Source: Guillardia theta CCMP2712 (Eukaryota; Protista; Cryptophyta). From it: 64,000 nucleotides of DNA. The notes beneath the pieces are model-generated. The model was not told the origin of the DNA and made no database searches. It saw only the letters and a program-made list of their open reading frames with translations. A program made the translations under genes and the position numbers. The stretch is taken from the NCBI RefSeq assembly GCF_000315625.1, contig NW_005434622.1, positions 463,697-527,696 on the forward strand, in the 5' to 3' direction. This document shows, piece by piece, positions 16,058 through 43,500 of the stretch. Every line of letters starts with the position of its first letter. Within the stretch, counting starts at the first letter, position 1.

Positions 16058-16614
16058 GCTGCACGTGAAGTCGAGGGGGGGTGGGGGTACGAATACAGTT
16101 TCTAGAAGGGGTGGGGGTGCCTACTTGGCTGCCCCGGCCCAGTTCGATCAGAGGGGAGGCGGGCTCGCTTGGCTTCACACAGAAGCGTCTCGAGCATGGG
16201 AGGGGGACGGAAAAGGAGGATGGCGGGGAAGGTGAAGAAGGGAGATAGGGGGTTTGTTTCAGAATACATGTAGAGGAGATAGCCAGCAGATAGATAACAA
16301 GTTCGAGGTGGTGAAGCAGCAATCTCAGTCTGGAACTTCTTGTCTTTGTGTACACACGGGGATTTGAATCGAACGATCCATTGCACGCGGGGTTTCTGGA
16401 GGCAGTCCATCGCATCCATTTCTGATCAATATGTGGTGACAAGCCGATAGATCTTGAGTTACCTTCCATAATTGAATGCTGACAAATTTCAAGAGGGCCG
16501 GGGGCCGTTGATAAAGTGGTTGACCTTCCTGTCAGGGAATATTCTACTCGCCACCGCTGGCCGTGTTCATAAACCAATTCATTTCGACTTGTCCTGAAGT
16601 GGGGTGTCTACGCA

Positions 16615-19600
16615 ATGAAGTCTTTTTTCTCCTTCTTGTGAGATAAACTTTATTTTCACTTCAACTTTTCTGGATTCAACTCTGAAATTCCTAATTCGCA
16701 GACTATGTTGCATTTTAATGCTACAGCTTTTACCCGTTCAGATGTTCTCGATCGCTGCGATGAAAGAGCAAACGAACCCCCCGAAAGGTTGTCCACCCAT
16801 ACTTCATGGTGCGATTGTAGTTGCTACTGTCTGCTGTGCTTTTGACACAACGATCACAGCCTCGAGACTGCGAGGCGGAGGACACGAAACAGTCTTCTCG
16901 TCAAAGTTTCTGAGGTGGATGAAAGTCTGTACTGCTGAGTTCATCTTATTTCATGCTAGTTCTGAGCTGGGGAATGATGGTCCAAACGACAATGTGCCAG
17001 GTTTGTTGTATCTTGTCTGCATCCGCCATGATTTCTGGTTTCTGGTAGAGCAAGCATCCAACCAGGCAGCAGGTCAAGATACGGATGCAAACCAGGGCAC
17101 AGCAAATGCGGGAAGGATGGCGGAGGACTCAAAATCTTTGGACCTTGAATTCACGTCGTCATCTGCAGGTTCGATGGTTCTTGAGAGTGCGGTGCTAACA
17201 TCGACTCAGGTCAACAGTATCCGCGAAGAGCTGAACAGTCACAAGGCAGATATGGAAGGCCTTCGCGTGGACGATTTTCAAGGGGATCACGAGGAAATTA
17301 CAGAAATTTTGGAGAGAATCCTGAGGATGGGAATTCGAGGACATGGAGTGAGAGTGGAATTCTGCTCGCCTTCGAACGATGACAGATCCATTTGATCGCA
17401 GCACGAGAAATGCCAGAGCCTCTCTCGCATTCCAGACCCACTCGATTTAACAGTCTCGACGAAGATAAGTGAGTGACATTGGGCTGCCTTTCTGGATCTG
17501 AACATTGTCATGTAGGATGAAAAGGCTGGAGAGGCTCATGTCGGAGGATCTTGATGCCCCAAGGAGGGAAGACTTCGGGCCAGGCTCAAGAACTTTTTCA
17601 GCACCTCTGACAGGGGCAAATGCTGTGGATTTGGATGTGAATAATGTGGCTTTATACTTCAAATCGTGATGATTTGCCGGCAGCCAAACGACCAACCAAA
17701 GCAGAGGCCCGATAACCTTGAACCTGTCTTCACCCGACAAGATGATGCACCAAGTTTGTGCCATGACGTCTGACATGCTCGTGTATAATTTGCTTCTAGA
17801 TCTGCCCGAAAGGCGACCTTCCAGAGAATCTGAGGGAGCGGCAAGGGCTGGTGTCCACCCTTCAAGACTTTCAGCTATGGCAGAAGAGGTTTATTCTTCG
17901 GCACCACCACCCCAGCCACGTCGGTACCTTGGTGGAAGGTGAATCCATCTTGAACCGCGAGAGATAGATAATGCTGTATACGTCAGAGGAGGAGGGGATA
18001 GAGGAAGGGGAGGAATGCGAACAGGTATGCTTAGCGAGGAAGCTGCATCAACCAGAGCTCCGGCTTTTGGTGGACGAGGAGGGAGACCCACATTGGGGTT
18101 TGATACACGCAATGAGCGAGAATATCAGGTGGCTTTCAATTTTCATCGTGCTGTTGATGAGAAAAGACAAGACGGTTCACACTTATTTTCAGCGCGGTTT
18201 GTTCTACGATCAATGGAAAGTTGCGAGGGATGTAGACCTTGACATAACTCAAGTACTGAGAAAATGCGAAAAACTTGCACCTTGTCCCAGAGTGAGATTT
18301 TCGTATAGGTTCTTCAAAGGAAAAAACCAGCTGAAAAGACTTCTGCTACCACCAGCGTTGAAGACATGGGAGTCGATGAGGTTTCAAGCTGGATGATGAG
18401 TCTGGAATTACCAGTCAATGCCATAGAAATAGTCAAGAAGGTGGGTGGTCAAACGTTTGATGTTGACATTAGATAACGTGATTCTGTATGTGCAGGAGGG
18501 ACTGAATGGCAAGGATGTTGCTGCATTGACTGTTGAGGAGATGGAGACTGAACTGGGACTCAGCAGGTCTTGTATGCCCATTTTTTTGATCTTTTTTGAA
18601 GAGGATTCAGATTACAAGCTAAGAAGCTGATGAATCGCATACAAGAATTCAAAAAGCCGGCCGAAGTGAAGGAAGCTGCCTCAAAGGTGGTCTTCGTCCA
18701 ATTATATCCCTTCCTGACACACTCAAAAGTCGATGGAACTTCGGGGTCTGCAGCCGTTGAATGCTCGGAAAGACTCAAACATGGTACAGAAGTCACAAGG
18801 CCTCCTTATTTCTGATCCCCCTTGTCAGGATTGGAATGCTGTCTTGGACGAAAAGGAGTCAGCGACAACTTATGACTCAAAGACGGACGCGTATGAGTAT
18901 GAGCAGGCTTCCGGAACAATAACGGAGAAAGAGGCTAAGAAGTTGAGGAAGCAGATTCGAGACCTCAAACGACAGAAGAAAGTCTCGGAAGGAGATACCA
19001 AGCAAGCAATCAAGGTACCTACTTTTTACGATACTTTCTCTGTTTCACTGACGGCAACCTTCAGCTTGAGATTGCAAAGCTTGAGGCACTTCTGTCACAA
19101 TCAGAGGTTCGTACACCAGCAGCTTGTTGATCCATTCATTTTGCTTTTCCGTTTCTTCTGAATGAGACAAACTGCAGAGCGAAAAGTTAAACCAGTACCA
19201 AAACTTGACAGAAGACGGTCTGCAATGTAATTGGCATCCAAAGAATACTTAATGTTGACCTGAAGGTGGTGTGCGAATGCGGGTCATCAGCGAAGGAAAA
19301 GGATATCAGCCAGAGAAGTGGGCAAGGGTGTGTGAAATAAATTCTGTCTGCTGAAGTGCTCTGATAAAACTACTTCAGGTTGAAGTTCATTTCACTGGAA
19401 AAGTTCAAGGAGGGGAAATTTTTCACAACACTCGGACTGGGGGATATCCAGTCAAGTTCATCGTGGGTGCGAAGCAAGTGATTCCGGGGCTGGACGTTGG
19501 GATTAAGGCGATGAAGGCTGGTGTGTCACCTAGAGTCATTGTTAACCGGATGGGCTGATGTCTCGTAGGCGGACGGGCTGACTTCATCTTCTCGCCCGAG

Positions 19601-20527
19601 TATGGATACGGATCCAAGGGACGGAAGCCTGTGGATGACGAGCCTGAGGTGAGCTCGCTTGCTCGTTGTGCTGGCTGAGTTGCCCCAGGTCTTGCCTGGA
19701 AGTTGGCTGGAGTATAATGTGGAGCTTATGGCCTTTGAAGCCAAGCCTCTGGGCTTCCCGTTGAGCTCGGCTGCGGACAACAGACCAAGCGTAACCTTTC
19801 ATATTCACAAATCGCTCAGTTGAATGGCCTTAAGCAGGGACAGGGAGCCCCTGATACCCAGGAGGATTTTCCTGCCCTCCCGTCCAGGGATAGAAATCAG
19901 CCAACGGGGGTGGCAGGAACTTCGAACACAGGGAAAGTTATGCAAGGATGGGCAAATGTCGTGAAGAATTCAGCGGCGAAGGTGATTTAAACGAAGCATG
20001 CCCTTGTGTACAACAGTGATGGACCGATTCTGCAGGCAAACGAAACTGTTGTGAAAGAACAAGTTCACAAGAGATCCCATTCAAGTGTTTTTTTCGCTTC
20101 TGTTGATTATATCAAGCTTAAAGCTTTCCGCTCTCTAGGAACTCCTGCTTCGGTCTACCATGGAGGCGGCGAGAACCATCAGACTCCTCTGGTCCCTGCT
20201 AACTGAATATTGGTGACCGACTGATGCCTCCCACAGACCCCAGGGAAGTCACCGAGAAAGCTTCAGGATCTTGACATGCATGCGGGTGACCGTCAGGAGG
20301 CAGCGTCCTCGTTGTGATGTCATTGGCAGCCTTGCTCAACATGGACTCGCTTTCTCTGGACGGCACTGAAGCAACCGAAGAAGAGATTGTCGACTCGGAT
20401 CCAGGTGCTCGAAGGAAAGTTCTTGTTGTATGTGACATTTTCATCTCTCGTAGAACTGGCGGCTCTCGCTGCCGGCAGGTCGACAACGACGAAATTCAAT
20501 CTCGCGCGAGCTGGTAAATTCGTTTGA
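16615..20527 (+). CDS. Signal-peptide-bearing SAM-domain + FKBP-type peptidyl-prolyl isomerase (many exons)
   Basis: Spliced N-terminus MKSFFSFLLCCILMLQLLP (intron 16638-16701). SAM-like EGLNGKDVAALTVEEMETELGLS..RKLMNRIQEF. FKBP motifs VEVHFTGK, PVKFIVGAKQVIPGLDVGIKAM, FSPEYGYG, LEYNVELM. The 3' end is approximate. Confidence 0.75.
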
Positions 20528-20722
20528 AGTGTCTGAGGTTGCTGACATCAACTCAGCTGGTCTGACGAAGCCAAACGAGGGTGGAGAGAGCGATGACTCG
20601 TGAAAATGCAAGGGAAAGAGTTCGTCGCCCGTCCTGCAGCATGTCCTGCCCTCAGCCTTTGGTTCCCAGCTTTCTCCTGTAGGATATGATTCATATTTTT
20701 TCAACTACAAATGTCCAATCAA

Positions 20723-22584
20723 TCAATCAATCCGCCCGCCCCCCATCTCTTTGATCTCAACGATCTCACACATGCTATCAATCAGAACGCCATTAGGATC
20801 AGTCGACTCCCTCAAGTCAAGAGTAACAAGGATGGTCGGAGCTTCGTCCTCAGTCCGAGCTGTCAGAGATAGACAGCAAGACAAGACAGCCAGGCTCAAG
20901 ACTCGCCCATCCATCTCTTCGACATTCTCAGTCTCGTAGAAGACATCCTCTGCCGAGATGTTTCCGAACATTTGATTGATTGCCTTGTCGTGCATGACGG
21001 CCGTCGTTCTAACACTTCCAGAGGAGAAGTCGACAAACGCTCCACACCAGGTGTGGGTGAAAACCTTTTGATTCTTGTCAGCATCAGGGAAGGGACAATG
21101 TCTGCAAGTGAACAGGTCAAACACCTCAAAAAAGTAGAGCCAACTCACTGGCAGAAAGTACTCCCGTCGTGATTGGGGAAAACTGCTCGAAGGCAACTGG
21201 CGCAGGACAGCACAAGAAATTCTCTGACTTCATGCAAGCATTTTATGTCATTCATCTGCCTTTCGCTTCCATCTTCCAACAGAAATCTCAAGTCATGGAT
21301 CTGAATTCTTTCGCACACACGCGCCCTGCAACCTGTCGTAGTCGTCACATCATTCCCTGCACATCCTATTTGGGTTACCGCTTCCCAGCAGGTCGCAAAG
21401 GTGCTTGTTCGTTTCTTGAGGGTCTGCAGGAGGTGTCTTGGATTTGTTTCGACGATGATGGATTGCATTGCTCTTGTCTAATGCGATGATGCACACGGTG
21501 TTGGATCTCGTGCTGAGGACGATGTCTTCGTTCTGTTGGAGGTCAACATAAGCCCCATGGAGCTGAACGAAGAAGACGCTGTTCAACAACTCTTCATGCG
21601 TCAAGCTAGAGAGCGTCATCGATAAATCTTTGCAGCGTGCGATGTCAATTAGGACCTTGACGTGACATCCCGCATATCCATCCCCGCCACCTGAATCAAA
21701 GTTCGCGTTGGTTACAAATGCGGCGATCTAGGTCGAGATTTGATTAGTTCAGCCATCATGAACTCTATTAGCGCACCTTGGAAACTTTTTTCCCGATTCG
21801 AATGTTCATGATTGAAGTGACAGCTTCTTTTGTAAAGAGAAGGCATCCACACACATTCGCTGTTGCCCCAAGGTGTTGAAACAAATCTTGAATTCTCGTG
21901 AAATGTATTTCTTGCTTTCCATCGATTGAGGAGTTTCGACCCAGCATTGTCAAGATCCTTTGACAAGCTCCATGACAGGTGTCCTTGCACGAAGCAAGAT
22001 GCTGCATGCCGATTCCGAGCAAGGTTTGACCCCTCGCAGATTTTACATGCTTTGTCTCATTCCAAGCGCTGGCCCTCTTGCCACAGGATCGGGATGAACT
22101 CTGACGAGGGATTCCTCCCTGTTTCACCCACTCCATGATCTTGTTTGCACATTCTGTGGTAGCTTTTGACACGTTCTTATCCATTCCCGGCCCTGTCACC
22201 CACTGCTGGTTGAAAACAAAGGTTTAGTTTGCGAACGGCACCGAGAAGTCAAAAGCTTACGCATGAGGAGGAATTCAGATTGCAAGCATCCTTCAATCGA
22301 AATAGAATGCGAAGATACGATGATCCAACGATTGAAAAGTCTGAAGAGTAAGTTCTATACAAGGAGTGTCTTCCTCCATTGATCAACACGACATCACCTA
22401 GTAACACCCCTCCATGGACCGCCCAGTGAGCTCTCCTTCCCCATAGCTTGAGACAGGCTGAGGTTGGGGAACAGAACTTGGAGAGGGATGTTGAAGACAT
22501 CTCGTCCTCTTGGATCACTTCGAGAGACAGCATCGCCAAGCTTCCTTCCTCTTTGATGTTTCGCACTACACCCACCGCCTGCAT
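20723..22584 (-). CDS. Multi-OB-fold ssDNA-binding protein, SHLD2 (FAM35A)/RPA1-like
   Basis: N-terminal OB motif CLKLWGRRAHW...LLGDVVLI. C-terminal OB with zinc ribbon CASC...TCRHC, then KAINQMFGNISAED and terminal TDPNGVLID, matching my recollection of the SHLD2 C-terminal pattern. Confidence 0.6.
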
Positions 22585-40553: not shown

Positions 40554-43500
40554 ATGCAGCGAGTGCTGCTAGCATGGCTGCTGTTATGCTCGGGGGGAGG
40601 AGGGAGGGAGGACATGGTTGGAGGAGGAGCCATCAAGAACGAGCTACCATCGGCCACGCTGGAGAGGCTCAGAACCTCCTCGCACTTGGTGGTTGAGACC
40701 GCGCGAGCAACTGTAAGTTCGCGTTGCGCCTGGACCTTGGGCGTGTCGACATCAGATGGTGGGGTCTCAAGGAAAACTAAGACTTGCAGCGAAGAAGGTA
40801 TGTGTGGAGAGTTCCACTTGTACAACAGGAAGCTACGCACCAAAGGAAGAGCTTGCATCCAAATCTGTCAGAAAGGACATTCACCGTTCTTCTGCATGCA
40901 GATGAAAGGGGGGGAACGATCGAGAGGACGTGAGGATGAGGATCGAAACTATGGATTACGTGAACGAAGAAAATCAAAATATGGACCAGATAAACGAAGT
41001 CAAACTAAGAGAAAACCGTTCAGAAAATCGTCCAGAAGAACAGATCCCAAGCCATCGGGCTTACAAGAGTTAAAGGGAAAGTTGCGAGCGAAGATTCGTG
41101 CAACTGTTAAAGGCAATTACACAGACAGAAAGAATTATAGGGACCAAATTGCAACATCGGATGGAGATCAAGCTGGTACAAAGAAACATAGACCTGGCTC
41201 CTTCCCTGCCTTGGGGATCGAGGATTCGATAGCCAAGGCTTTAATGCATGCAGGGTACAAGTTTCCGACGCCCGTGCAACGCAAATCGATTCCTGAACTC
41301 TTATCCGGGGCTAATGTTGTGATGATGGCTCGAACAGGATCAGGCAAGACGGCCGCTTTCTTGGTTCCTCTGATTCAGAGAATTCGAGCAATAAGTGACT
41401 CAAACTGGGCTCAGGGCAAAGTGATTGGCATACAAGGTCTTGTTCTGGTCCCAACTAGGGAACTTGCGTTGCAAACTTTCAATTTTTTCAAGTCATATGC
41501 CAAGTACACGCAGTTGACTGCCTGCTTGATCGTTGGTGGAGAAGCCTTGGAGCCGCAGTTCGCGGCACTAGCAACAAATCCGAACGTGGTCATCGCTACA
41601 CCTGGACGATTGCTGCAACTGTTGAACGAGGTGAGGCGTGGGTGACAACATCGGCTTTCTTTCTTATTATCCAAGGTGAGAGTTCTGAGCTGGATCGTGT
41701 TTGACAGGTCCGCACGTTCTCATTGAAGGGAGTTCGGGTTTGCGTCCTTGACGAGGCTGATCGCTTGTTCGAGACTTCCCTGATACGTGAGCCTCTGACT
41801 AGCGATCTTTTTGTGTGCACTCATTGTTTCTTTACCGATAGATGAAGTACAAGAGATCATGGCAGCGATGTCGTCGCAGAACGAAATCAAAATCGTTCGC
41901 ACCACGCGAAAATCAAGAGCTGGAAAATTGCATGGGAGTGACTGGAATGGTACAAAAGAGAGCGAGAGAGCGGTGAAGAAGAAACCTTTCAGGCAAATGA
42001 TCTTGGTCAGTGCTACAATGCCAAAGGAGCTCGCAGACTTTGCATCAGCCGATGTGCAAGATCATATCCTGATACGCCTAGATACTGATACTCTAATGTC
42101 CGAAAGCCTCAAAGTCGGATACTTTTATGTCTTGGATTACGAGAAACTTCCCGGACTTGCCTTCCTACTGAGCAATATTCTTGACACGACGGGTAATACA
42201 ACATTACCGTCAATTCAAGACTTGATTATGAATCCTCATCCCTTGACGCCCTGGGGAGCCTCGAATGTGCATAAACTTCAAGACCAGAAGTTCAAGAAAA
42301 GATGTCTCATCTTCTGCGCCACAAGGCACAGCGTGGAACTTATAACGCAGGTGCTGGGACACGCAGGCTTCCAGGTGGGAGGGCTCCATGGGCACGCAGA
42401 CAACGAGCAAAGGAAAATTCTGGTCGAAGACTTTGCGAAGAAAAGACTTCAGGTTGTCCGGTAGTAATAGTTTTGGCTGTACTGATTATCGTGATATGAA
42501 GGTTCTAGTCGTCACAGACCTTGCAGCACGTGGCATTGATATCCCTCTCCTGGACTACGTCATAAATTTTGACTTTCCGAGTACTCCCAAGTTGTTCATT
42601 CATCGTTGCGGGTGAGAATTGCTCATAAGGTCACCGGCCCCTGACCTGTCGGACAGTCGTGCAGGCAGGGCAGGGATGATAGGCACCGTCTATTCCCTCA
42701 TTACTCCAGAAGACCTTCCGCATCTCATCGATGCAAATCTTGTCCTTGGGCGGAAAATGAGAACTACCCCTGATGATCAGAACGTGAAATCCGCTGGAGG
42801 ATGCCTGTTAGATGCCGCAGACAACTTCCTGATTGGAAAGTTGCCGACAGATTACATTGGATACTGGACAAGAGCTATTCATCAAATATTTCTCAAGGAC
42901 TATGATCTTGAAGGTCAAGCGGCGACAGCGCGGAGGTAAACAGAGGCCTCGTCCAAAACGCTTCCTTGATTTTCTTATTTCAACCAGAGGATTCAAGTTG
43001 TACCTCAAAACTTGTCCTTCACCCAGTGATCAGAGCAAGAAGTATTTTGTTGGAAATGTATTTGTGTAATGAGCTGAAGCTGAGATGTCAGACAAGCCAA
43101 CGATCTCTTGGACACAGAATTGGCGTATCTGCAGGTCCATCACTGGTTTCGCCACTTAGCGGGAGAGGCTGATCTTTTCGAAGAGAAGGTACAAACGTCT
43201 CTTGTTGGCTGATCTGACCTCAAGGGACAGGAACAAAGGGATGCTTTCCTGGAGTCAAGCTCGAAGCTGTCCATCAAGAAAGGGAGTTTCCTTATGCCAG
43301 GGGAGAAAATCTTGTGGGAGCTCAACGATGGGGTTCGTAAGGAAGTACGTCGATCTGACTCCCTTTCAAGGTCCTAAATTGCTTTTTTTACAGGCGGGTT
43401 GGAGGCTTCAAAGACATTCAAAGTTTGTTTCCAAGTATCTAGCCAACGGATTACAGCAGCATCCAGCAGAGTCATCAGAGAAAAGCCTCAATTCATCTTT

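What the first reader, a model, noticed from the sequence alone, without database searches (positions are those of the whole stretch)
16615..16882. Signal peptide followed by ubiquitin-tail mimic RLRGG on a SAM+FKBP protein
Seen: the spliced leader MKSFFSFLLCCILMLQLLP... is followed by SRLRGGG (16865-16882), ahead of cytosol-type domains. Known: ubiquitin ends LRLRGG and is cleaved by DUBs, and cryptophytes import periplastid proteins with bipartite leaders through the ERAD-derived SELMA machinery. Inference: the motif could be a DUB-type processing site that removes the leader of periplastid-resident proteins. That would be a maturation code I cannot tie to a described mechanism.
Basis: partly seen in the sequence, partly recalled or inferred. 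Interest (0 to 1): 0.8.

Follow-up and report, generated by a model that had tools for sequence, protein, structure and literature searches.

The report
Ubiquitin-tail motif ends periplastid leader
A Guillardia theta gene for a SAM-FKBP protein begins with a secretion signal and a short leader ending in ubiquitin's last residues (RLRGG), a tag also found on all six proteins shown by GFP fusion to enter the alga's relict endosymbiont cytoplasm, so it probably marks where the import leader is cut off.

Summary
The window is Guillardia theta nuclear DNA. RNA contigs show one 30-exon gene (16615-20603, 849 aa), which GenBank splits into two models. Its product has a signal-peptide-like start (residues 1-27), a 23-residue basic leader ending in RLRGG (16865-16879), RG-rich disorder, a SAM domain and an FKBP domain.

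Within this window alone the pentapeptide is at chance level. In published reference sets (ASAFind 2.0 appendices), however, all six G. theta proteins located in the periplastid compartment (PPC) by GFP fusion carry LRGG, four of them LRLRGG. PPC Cdc48, PPC ubiquitin and four further proteins with a non-aromatic first leader residue also carry such a motif. It lies 14-65 residues after the signal-peptide cut, just before the conserved mature part. About 34 stroma-type leaders carry none. Diatom PPC proteins show a looser xRGG.

In a close relative both substitutions inside the RLRGG codons are synonymous.

Cleavage and the enzyme remain inferred. A candidate enzyme is the nucleomorph-encoded ZUFSP-like peptidase, because that family cuts the linear peptide RLRGG.

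I found no description of the motif in the accessible literature. The scan noted the same motif earlier on other DNA of this genome.

The parts
16536..16614 (+). 5' UTR. The RNA contigs start at about 16536-16545. It holds no ATG and has an in-frame TAA upstream of the start codon.
   Evidence: Depth and record coordinates; arithmetic; transcript L004.
16615..16637 (+). Exon 1: start codon and the first 7 2/3 codons of the signal-peptide-like segment.
   Evidence: The exon 1/exon 2 junction is seen directly in transcript L004. The 64-nt skip fits the depth.
16638..16701 (+). Intron 1 (64 nt, GT..AG).
16702..16759 (+). Remainder of the signal-peptide-like segment, through residue 27 (h-region F4-L18, c-region PVQMFSIAA). 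The predicted cut is after A26 or A27.
   Evidence: Kyte-Doolittle 15-residue mean peaks at 2.55. The cut site follows the (-3,-1) rule by eye; no SignalP run was available. No substitution in the close relative L011.
16760..16879 (+). Transit-peptide-like leader, residues 28-50, interrupted by intron 2 (16809-16859). It has K29, K36, R46, R48 and a single E. Its first residue is not aromatic.
   Evidence: In relative L011 there is one replacement (G37A) and three synonymous changes.
16809..16859 (+). Intron 2 (51 nt, in frame). Unspliced, it would add 17 hydrophobic residues.
   Evidence: A 51-nt skip in the depth. The junction is seen in L004 and in P0276 and P0280.
16865..16879 (+). RLRGG (R46-G50), identical to ubiquitin's last five residues. 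The predicted end of the leader is after G50.
   Evidence: Sequence. The motif recurs in PPC reference proteins. The changes 16871 C>A and 16876 C>G in relative L011 are both synonymous.
16615..20603 (+). Whole coding region: 30 exons and 29 GT..AG introns of 40-71 nt, giving 849 aa. GenBank splits it into a 217-aa ORF model and XP_005829563.1 (552 aa).
17168..18204 (+). Disordered, RG/RGG-rich region (about residues 116-345), with introns.
   Evidence: Composition and RGG positions. There are 19 synonymous against 5 replacement codon changes over residues 1-318 in the relative.
18372..18653 (+). SAM domain (residues 383-443), with introns.
   Evidence: Pfam SAM_1 at 18.4 bits, below the cut-off. 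An ortholog profile hits solved SAM domains 2dkz and CNK2 at E = 3.5e-6 to 7e-4.
18910..19106 (+). Conserved K/E-rich helical linker (residues 500-548), invariant blocks in the five aligned sequences (G. theta, Hanusia phi and three unnamed metagenome or transcript relatives).
   Evidence: Alignment A1.
19307..19727 (+). FKBP-type domain (residues 576-669), with introns. The pocket positions equivalent to FKBP12 W59 and D37 read L and H.
   Evidence: Pfam FKBP_C at 9.1e-22. Alignment to wheat FKBP73 and FKBP51/52. The residue mapping to FKBP12 rests on my own knowledge.

Best explanation
The first 50 residues are a bipartite presequence of the periplastid-compartment (PPC) type. A cleavable ER signal peptide (about residues 1-27) takes the chain into the chloroplast ER. 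A short basic leader without an aromatic first residue (28-50) takes it through the ERAD-derived SELMA translocon into the relict endosymbiont cytoplasm.

The leader ends in RLRGG. This is the local form of a class-wide box, h-L-R-[LMV]-[RK]-G-G, that closes the leaders of G. theta PPC proteins directly before the mature part. The box is most likely the site at which the leader is clipped off after import, by a cysteine peptidase that reads the ubiquitin tail (R-x-R-G-G) as a linear peptide. The mature SAM-FKBP protein would then start at G51.

Shown here: the gene model, transcription, the leader's form, the recurrence and position of the box, and purifying selection on it. Inferred: PPC location of this protein, cleavage after GG, and the type of enzyme.
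For: Gene and leader are real.

Signal-peptide-like start with a basic, non-acidic, non-aromatic leader. This fits the published PPC rules.

The box recurs in reference proteins:
- All six GFP-located G. theta PPC proteins carry it (evidence column): EF-1alpha MLRLRGG, 14-3-3 ALRLRGG, RRM1 PLRLRGG, CyP ALRLRGG, Ubc8 IPLRGG, ugg-t MSLRGG.
- So do PPC Cdc48 (CMRLRGG) and PPC ubiquitin (CLRVRGG).
- So do four more proteins with a non-aromatic first leader residue: FBPase ALRLRGG, thioredoxin FLRLRGG, aldolase TLRMRGG and a nucleotide transporter SLRLKGG, whose ortholog in another cryptophyte reads NLRMKGG.
- About 34 aromatic-type G. theta leaders have none in the presequence. Fisher's test gives 2.6e-7, and the chance of 6 out of 6 is about 5e-13.

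The box sits at the junction with the mature part. In EF-1alpha the next residues are GKEK, the native N-terminus. In ubiquitin the next residue is M1.

Diatom PPC proteins show xRGG in the same place: DLRGG, QIRGG, SLRGG, GRGG, ARGG (P about 2e-4).

In a relative at about 5 % neutral divergence, both changes inside the RLRGG codons are synonymous.

PPC import in diatoms needs no specific leader motif, which points to a role after import.

A 'TPL peptidase' is postulated but unidentified. ZUFSP-type peptidases cut the peptide RLRGG efficiently without a ubiquitin fold, reading the two arginines. A ZUFSP-like gene lies in all four cryptophyte nucleomorph genomes analysed in that study, with no role assigned.
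Against: - No mature N-terminus and no cleavage assay exist for any of these proteins.
- This protein has S where the class has L at position -6.
- It carries three other RGG triplets, so a chance match is less unlikely here than elsewhere. The expected number of RLRGG in this protein is 0.003.
- The N-termini of its orthologs in other genera could not be recovered, so conservation beyond one close relative is untested.
- Signal-peptide and leader calls are heuristic; neither SignalP nor ASAFind was run.
- Stroma-bound proteins cross the same translocon without the box, so the box cannot be the general way of removing ubiquitin.
- Most deubiquitinases need folded ubiquitin.
- The reference sets are small, and two leaders (CyP and FBPase) share a 10-residue stretch, so not all cases are independent.
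- I counted by eye and did not read part 5 of Appendix S9.
Confidence: 0.5

Rival explanations
1. The box is functional but is not a ubiquitin-tail protease site. Either an unrelated leader peptidase cuts at or near it, with the arginine as the determinant as in the mitochondrial and stromal processing peptidases, or it is not cut at all and acts as a retention or sorting signal that keeps the protein in the PPC or directs it on to the nucleomorph.
For: The recurrence and position are the same as for the main reading. Diatoms show only xRGG rather than the full ubiquitin tail. ptDUP is absent from cryptophytes. Most deubiquitinases need folded ubiquitin.
Against: In G. theta the box matches ubiquitin's tail over five to six residues in most cases, more than an arginine rule needs. 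PPC ubiquitin's own precursor uses the same junction. Import and retention in the diatom PPC were obtained with leaders lacking any such motif.
Confidence: 0.25
2. The box is an inherited passenger. PPC leaders spread by duplication or exon shuffling of a leader cassette that once came from a ubiquitin gene, and LRLRGG is carried along without a present function.
For: The CyP and FBPase leaders share the stretch VPQALRLRGG. PPC ubiquitin has a degenerate ubiquitin-like unit in its leader. In the target, an intron lies directly before the codons of SRLRGG.
Against: Apart from the box, the leaders share no similarity and differ in length from 14 to 65 residues. The box is kept between two cryptophytes in the transporter while the rest of that leader differs. 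Both substitutions in the target's box are synonymous. Diatoms have a related box.
Confidence: 0.13
3. In this particular protein RLRGG is a chance RGG-type peptide. The protein is not PPC-bound: it stays in the ER or secretory route, or is made mainly from a downstream AUG (M14, M22 or M28) as a cytosolic or nuclear protein.
For: There are four RGG and ten RG in the protein. The window shows no excess of the motif. ER-resident FKBPs with signal peptides exist (my own knowledge). A prokaryote-type gene caller picked M14.
Against: The first AUG has G at -3, no upstream AUG and an upstream in-frame stop, and every transcript 5' end lies upstream of it. The signal-peptide codons are unchanged in the relative, and the leader is under purifying selection. 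The leader matches the PPC class in charge, first residue, length and box. There is no ER-retention end.
Confidence: 0.12

Closest known systems
Bipartite targeting signals of Guillardia theta periplastid proteins (Gould et al. 2006; EF-1alpha, 14-3-3, RRM1, CyP, Ubc8, ugg-t)
   Same: A signal peptide is followed by a leader without an aromatic first residue on a cytosol-type protein. The leader ends in (L)RLRGG or LRGG before the mature part.
   Different: The target has S at -6. Its location is untested. None of the papers I could read describes the box; they state that such leaders lack sequence conservation.
Ubiquitin precursor processing (polyubiquitin and ubiquitin-ribosomal fusions cut after RLRGG by deubiquitinases)
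   Same: The same pentapeptide directly precedes the released protein. G. theta PPC ubiquitin uses LRVRGG-M1 at its own leader junction.
   Different: No ubiquitin fold precedes the motif: only about 18 residues lie between the signal-peptide cut and RLRGG. Enzymes that need folded ubiquitin should not act.
ZUFSP/ZUP1-family cysteine peptidases
   Same: They cut the linear peptide RLRGG with high activity, reading R-x-R through two acidic residues. A homolog is reported in all four cryptophyte nucleomorph genomes analysed in that study.
   Different: Their known substrates are ubiquitin chains. The nucleomorph protein was assigned by fold recognition only. I could not obtain its sequence, and nobody has linked it to leaders.
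Coronavirus papain-like protease cutting LxGG in viral polyproteins
   Same: A ubiquitin-tail-like linear motif serves as a maturation site within a longer chain.
   Different: The enzyme is viral and the setting is unrelated. Its activity on the peptide is far below its activity on ubiquitin.
ptDUP, the periplastid deubiquitinase of diatoms, within the SELMA import model
   Same: It works in the same compartment and pathway and removes ubiquitin from imported preproteins.
   Different: It is USP-type, is absent from cryptophytes, and has not been proposed to remove leaders.
Large FKBPs (wheat FKBP73, human FKBP51/52)
   Same: They give the best structural-sequence matches to the FKBP domain.
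   Different: The target has no TPR domain. It has a single FK domain with L and H at two pocket positions, joined to a SAM domain and RG-rich disorder. This combination was found only in cryptophyte-like sequences.

Membership tests
PPC-type bipartite targeting signal of cryptophytes | N-terminal ER signal peptide | tested here: met
   n-region MK, h-region of 15 residues (15-residue hydropathy mean up to 2.55), c-region with P19 and S-I-A/A. This is heuristic only; SignalP was not available.
PPC-type bipartite targeting signal of cryptophytes | First residue after the signal-peptide cut is not aromatic (F, Y or W; the sources differ on whether L counts too) | tested here: met
   A27 or M28 at the predicted cut. 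A cut before F23 would need M at -1, which breaks the (-3,-1) rule.
PPC-type bipartite targeting signal of cryptophytes | Leader is not acidic near the cut, since acidic starts keep proteins in the ER | tested here: met
   Residues 28-50 have 2 K, 2 R, 1 H and 1 E.
PPC-type bipartite targeting signal of cryptophytes | Leader closed by h-L-R-[LMV]-[RK]-G-G (a feature derived here from the reference sets) | tested here: met
   A-S-R-L-R-G-G at residues 44-50. Five of six positions fit, with S at -6.
PPC-type bipartite targeting signal of cryptophytes | Protein located in the PPC or nucleomorph | not testable with these tools
   Needs GFP fusion or immunolocalisation.
Ubiquitin-fusion precursor | Beta-grasp ubiquitin fold directly before the GG | tested here: not met
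   About 18 residues lie between the predicted cut and RLRGG, and there is no identity to ubiquitin beyond the five residues.
Ubiquitin-fusion precursor | C-terminal RLRGG followed by the released protein | tested here: met
   Residues 46-50.
FKBP-type peptidyl-prolyl isomerase | FKBP_C domain | tested here: met
   Pfam PF00254 at 77.6 bits against a cut-off of 21.1. PDB FKBP hits down to 5e-37.
FKBP-type peptidyl-prolyl isomerase | Canonical pocket residues (FKBP12 Y26, F36, D37, V55, I56, W59, Y82, F99) | tested here: inconclusive
   The alignment shows VIPGLD and IFHNT, that is L for W59 and H for D37. Activity cannot be judged from sequence.
SAM domain | Match to SAM profiles or structures | tested here: met
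   Pfam SAM_1 is below the cut-off (18.4 against 23 bits). A three-sequence ortholog profile finds solved SAM domains at E = 3.5e-6 to 7e-4.
Substrate of a ZUFSP-type peptidase | Linear R-x-R-G-G accessible in a disordered stretch | tested here: met
   RLRGG lies in a P/G-rich leader.
Substrate of a ZUFSP-type peptidase | An active enzyme of that family present in the PPC | not tested
   Only a published fold-recognition assignment of nucleomorph ORFs (Gt2_270 and three orthologs) exists. The sequence was not obtainable here.

The most novel reading that the evidence does not exclude
Proteins that stay in the periplastid compartment are matured by a ubiquitin-tail code. After SELMA import, a nucleomorph-encoded ZUFSP-type peptidase cuts after R-x-R-G-G and removes the leader together with any ubiquitin attached to it. 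This would identify the long-postulated leader peptidase. It would also explain how cryptophytes manage without ptDUP although their PPC holds 26S proteasomes. Diatoms keep a relaxed xRGG version of the code.
Probability: 0.2. Interest if true: 0.9.

Novelty: new variant of a known kind. Interest (0 to 1): 0.8.

Why it matters
How proteins resident in the periplastid compartment lose their leaders is an open point of the SELMA import model. Reviews postulate a leader peptidase that nobody has identified. Cryptophytes lack the only known periplastid deubiquitinase.

A conserved ubiquitin-tail box at the junction between leader and mature protein gives three things:
- A sequence marker that separates PPC-bound from stroma-bound and ER proteins. 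Current predictors use only the first residue of the leader and composition.
- A predicted mature N-terminus for each such protein. Here it is G51.
- A concrete enzyme class and a named candidate gene to test.

For this gene the result also corrects the reference annotation, which has two models for one 849-aa protein. It adds a cryptophyte-specific SAM-FKBP protein to the candidate proteome of the relict cytoplasm and nucleus.

Tried and rejected
Chance reading. My first reading was 'chance RGG peptide in an RG-rich protein'. I held it until. It is supported by the within-window counts and the per-protein expectation. I gave it up when the published PPC sets showed the box on nearly all bona fide members.

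Ortholog N-termini were not recovered:
- The FKBP-exon search of the representative library gave Hanusia phi and three unnamed relatives from metagenome or transcript contigs, but all lack a usable N-terminus.
- The Hanusia model starts in a wrong frame inside exon 6.
- L002 runs off its 5' end into a low-complexity repeat.
- The hydrophobic start of P0271 is intron read-through.
- L007 and L008 are repeat-ridden contigs with only the SAM exon.
- The word searches with P0261 and P0131 were swamped by low-complexity candidates.
- The protein atlas gave nothing for the full protein and only generic BOP1 for the neighbouring gene.

Raw RNA reads (run X21) gave only 8 reads.

Literature. Searches for RLRGG or LRGG together with plastid, periplastid, cryptophyte or ZUFSP terms found no paper that describes the box. 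Three targeting papers that I searched by term do not mention it. Gould et al. 2006 (MBE) is not held, so an earlier remark there cannot be excluded.

Not done:
- I did not type the spliced protein into any tool. References to L004, P0276 and P0280 became available instead.
- The nucleomorph ZUFSP-like sequence could not be fetched.
- Part 5 of ASAFind Appendix S9 was not read.
Full report
Organism and gene. Spliced RNA contigs from three runs lie on 16536-20900. Fifteen joints were printed. I derived the rest from the skipped lengths in the depth table and from the record coordinates, all of which fit exactly. The result is one gene of 30 exons and 29 GT..AG introns of 40-71 nt, with the ATG at 16615 and the stop ending at 20603, encoding 849 aa. 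An independent JGI transcript (L004) shows the first junctions directly, has an in-frame TAA upstream of the ATG, and translates to the same protein minus one Q, which reflects a NAGNAG acceptor. An MMETSP ORF of 848 aa has the same first 70 residues. The GenBank annotation splits the gene into an unspliced 217-aa ORF and XP_005829563.1 of 552 aa.

The observation. The product starts MKSFFSFLLCCILMLQLL-PVQMFSIAA. This has a short charged n-region, a 15-residue hydrophobic core with hydropathy up to 2.55, and a c-region with small residues at -3 and -1. Then comes a 23-residue stretch with two K, two R and one E that ends in RLRGG (16865-16879), followed by G51. A 51-nt in-frame intron (16809-16859) removes a second hydrophobic stretch seen in the raw ORF. 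Downstream lie RG-rich disorder, a SAM domain (weak in Pfam but clear with an ortholog profile), a conserved helical linker and an FKBP domain.

Chance, taken alone. The expected number of RLRGG in this protein is 0.003. The protein holds four RGG. My own rough estimate, not a tool result, is that a proteome of this size should hold about ten RLRGG by chance. Up to this point I read the motif as a chance match.

The turn. A text search of the supplementary files of ASAFind 2.0 (PMC12136025) for the motif found it in the 25-residue windows of other G. theta leaders. I then read the files.

Guillardia proteins with the box:
- All six G. theta proteins whose leaders were shown by GFP fusion to reach the periplastid compartment (evidence column) carry it: EF-1alpha MLRLRGG, 14-3-3 ALRLRGG, RRM1 PLRLRGG, cyclophilin ALRLRGG, Ubc8 IPLRGG and ugg-t MSLRGG.
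- PPC Cdc48 has CMRLRGG, and PPC ubiquitin has CLRVRGG directly before its M1.
- In the cryptophyte 'plastid' set, the entries whose leader does not begin with an aromatic residue include an FBPase with ALRLRGG, a thioredoxin with FLRLRGG, a class II aldolase with TLRMRGG and a nucleotide transporter with SLRLKGG. The transporter's ortholog in another cryptophyte reads NLRMKGG at the same place while the rest of the leader differs.

Position and controls. By my count the box ends 14 to 65 residues after the predicted signal-peptide cut. It is followed at once, or within about 20 residues, by the conserved mature part. In EF-1alpha the next residues are GKEK, the native N-terminus. About 34 G. 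theta leaders of the aromatic, stroma-bound type in parts 1-4 of the same file have no such box in the presequence. The two RGG I saw in that file outside a box lie in conserved mature regions, one of them in a non-Guillardia entry whose leader is not aromatic-type. Guillardia entries without the box and without an aromatic start are mostly BLAST-assigned proteins whose mature domain follows the signal peptide directly, which is what ER proteins look like.

Statistics. Fisher's test for 6 of 6 against 0 of 34 gives 2.6e-7. The chance of six of six leaders holding [LMIV][RK]GG is about 5e-13. These counts were made by eye on small sets. Two leaders (CyP and FBPase) share ten residues and so are not independent.

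Diatoms. Thalassiosira PPC reference proteins show a looser form in the same position, before an acidic or mature-looking part: sDer1-1 DLRGG, sSec14 QIRGG, TrxH SLRGG, sCdc48-2 GRGG and sCdc48 ARGG. That is five RGG against 0.5 expected, P about 2e-4.

Selection on this gene's box. An ENA metagenome contig (L011) is a close relative. It differs at 5.3 % of intron sites and 4.9 % of upstream sites but only 2.5 % of exon sites, with 19 synonymous against 5 replacement codon changes over residues 1-318. The signal-peptide codons are unchanged, and the leader has one replacement (G37A). Two substitutions fall inside the fifteen bases of RLRGG, and both are synonymous. The sample is small, but it shows that the leader is translated and constrained.

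How it most likely works. Published work gives the frame:
- Such proteins enter the ER by the signal peptide and cross the next membrane by SELMA with ubiquitination.
- A non-aromatic first residue keeps them in the PPC.
- Import into the diatom PPC needs no particular leader motif. A box conserved at the leader's end therefore points to a step after import.
- A leader peptidase is postulated but unknown.
- The diatom deubiquitinase ptDUP has no cryptophyte homolog.

A ubiquitin fold cannot precede the box here, so enzymes that need folded ubiquitin are unlikely. The ZUFSP family is the exception. Its catalytic core cuts the peptide RLRGG with high activity and reads the two arginines through two acidic residues. 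A re-analysis of nucleomorph genomes reports a homolog of exactly this protein ('zinc finger with Ufm1-specific peptidase domain') in all four cryptophyte nucleomorphs it analysed, with no role assigned. I could not obtain that sequence, so this link is an inference from two papers and not a test.

The protein itself. The combination of SAM, helical linker and FKBP was found only in Hanusia phi and in a few unnamed relatives from metagenome or transcript contigs. The FKBP domain is nearest to the FK domains of large FKBPs but has L and H at two pocket positions, so isomerase activity is uncertain. With its RG-rich region it looks like a nucleo-cytoplasmic type of protein, which suits the relict cytoplasm or nucleomorph. 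Its role there is unknown.

Novelty and limits. Seven literature searches and term searches in three targeting papers found no description of the box. One of these papers states that such leaders lack sequence conservation. Gould et al. 2006 (MBE), which introduced five of the six proteins, is not held, so an earlier remark cannot be excluded.

Earlier scan notes. After my analysis I found that the scan holds 32 earlier notes with RLRGG on other pieces of this genome. Follow-up agents reached the same reading, and one speaks of about 200 proteins. None mentions ZUFSP. These notes are not independent evidence, and I did not test the number.

What remains unshown: cleavage, the enzyme, the location of this protein, and conservation of its leader beyond one close relative.

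Noticed in passing
window 40554-41645 (+), motif at 40896-40913: A DBP10-type helicase gene with a signal-peptide-like start ([12 protein letters not shown]...). In the unspliced ORF it has CMQMKGG, which resembles the box of PPC Cdc48 (CMRLRGG). A GTAAGT donor at 40713 and two in-frame acceptors (exon starting at 40872 or at 40902) leave open whether the mature protein reads ...FFCMQMKGG or ...RAT-MKGG. It may be a second box-bearing leader in the same window, on a ribosome-biogenesis factor that would suit the nucleomorph.
   Followed up: partly
window 16615-20603; L001 4918-7409 and 8126-8779: The reference annotation of G. theta splits this gene into an unspliced 217-aa ORF (it starts at M22 and reads through four introns) and XP_005829563.1 (552 aa). 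Leaders lost in this way will hide PPC candidates in proteome-wide predictions.
   Followed up: yes
window 19834/19837: NAGNAG alternative acceptor. RNA contigs differ by 3 nt (pieces start at 19835 or 19838), which gives products with or without Q691.
   Followed up: partly
L007 1-2509 and L008 1-2800 (JGI metagenome contigs): A relative's genomic contig carries one intact SAM exon preceded by many decayed copies of a 'QEKLSGVDVV'-like fragment, interspersed with CA/TG-type simple repeats. It looks like a tandemly amplified exon fragment.
   Followed up: no
window 16219-16559: One RNA contig of run X7 covers the intergenic stretch upstream of the usual 5' end (about 16536), between this gene and the divergent BOP1 gene. 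It may be a longer 5' UTR with two short upstream ORFs (ATG at 16432 and 16478) or promoter-associated transcription.
   Followed up: no
Sequencing-run output, run X5: A run labelled as a freshwater metagenome holds 56 % of the sampled words of this locus, although G. theta is known to me as a marine isolate. The label may be wrong, or a culture or feed organism may have been present.
   Followed up: no
P0131 (EukProt, Hanusia phi): The Hanusia model of the ortholog starts in a wrong frame within exon 6 and reads through an intron inside the SAM domain, so public protein sets for this family are unreliable at the N-terminus.
   Followed up: partly
ASAFind 2.0 Appendix S3, gt_155024: The leader of G. 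theta periplastid ubiquitin contains a degenerate ubiquitin-like unit ending in LRVRGG before the true ubiquitin. This may be the evolutionary source of the box.
   Followed up: no
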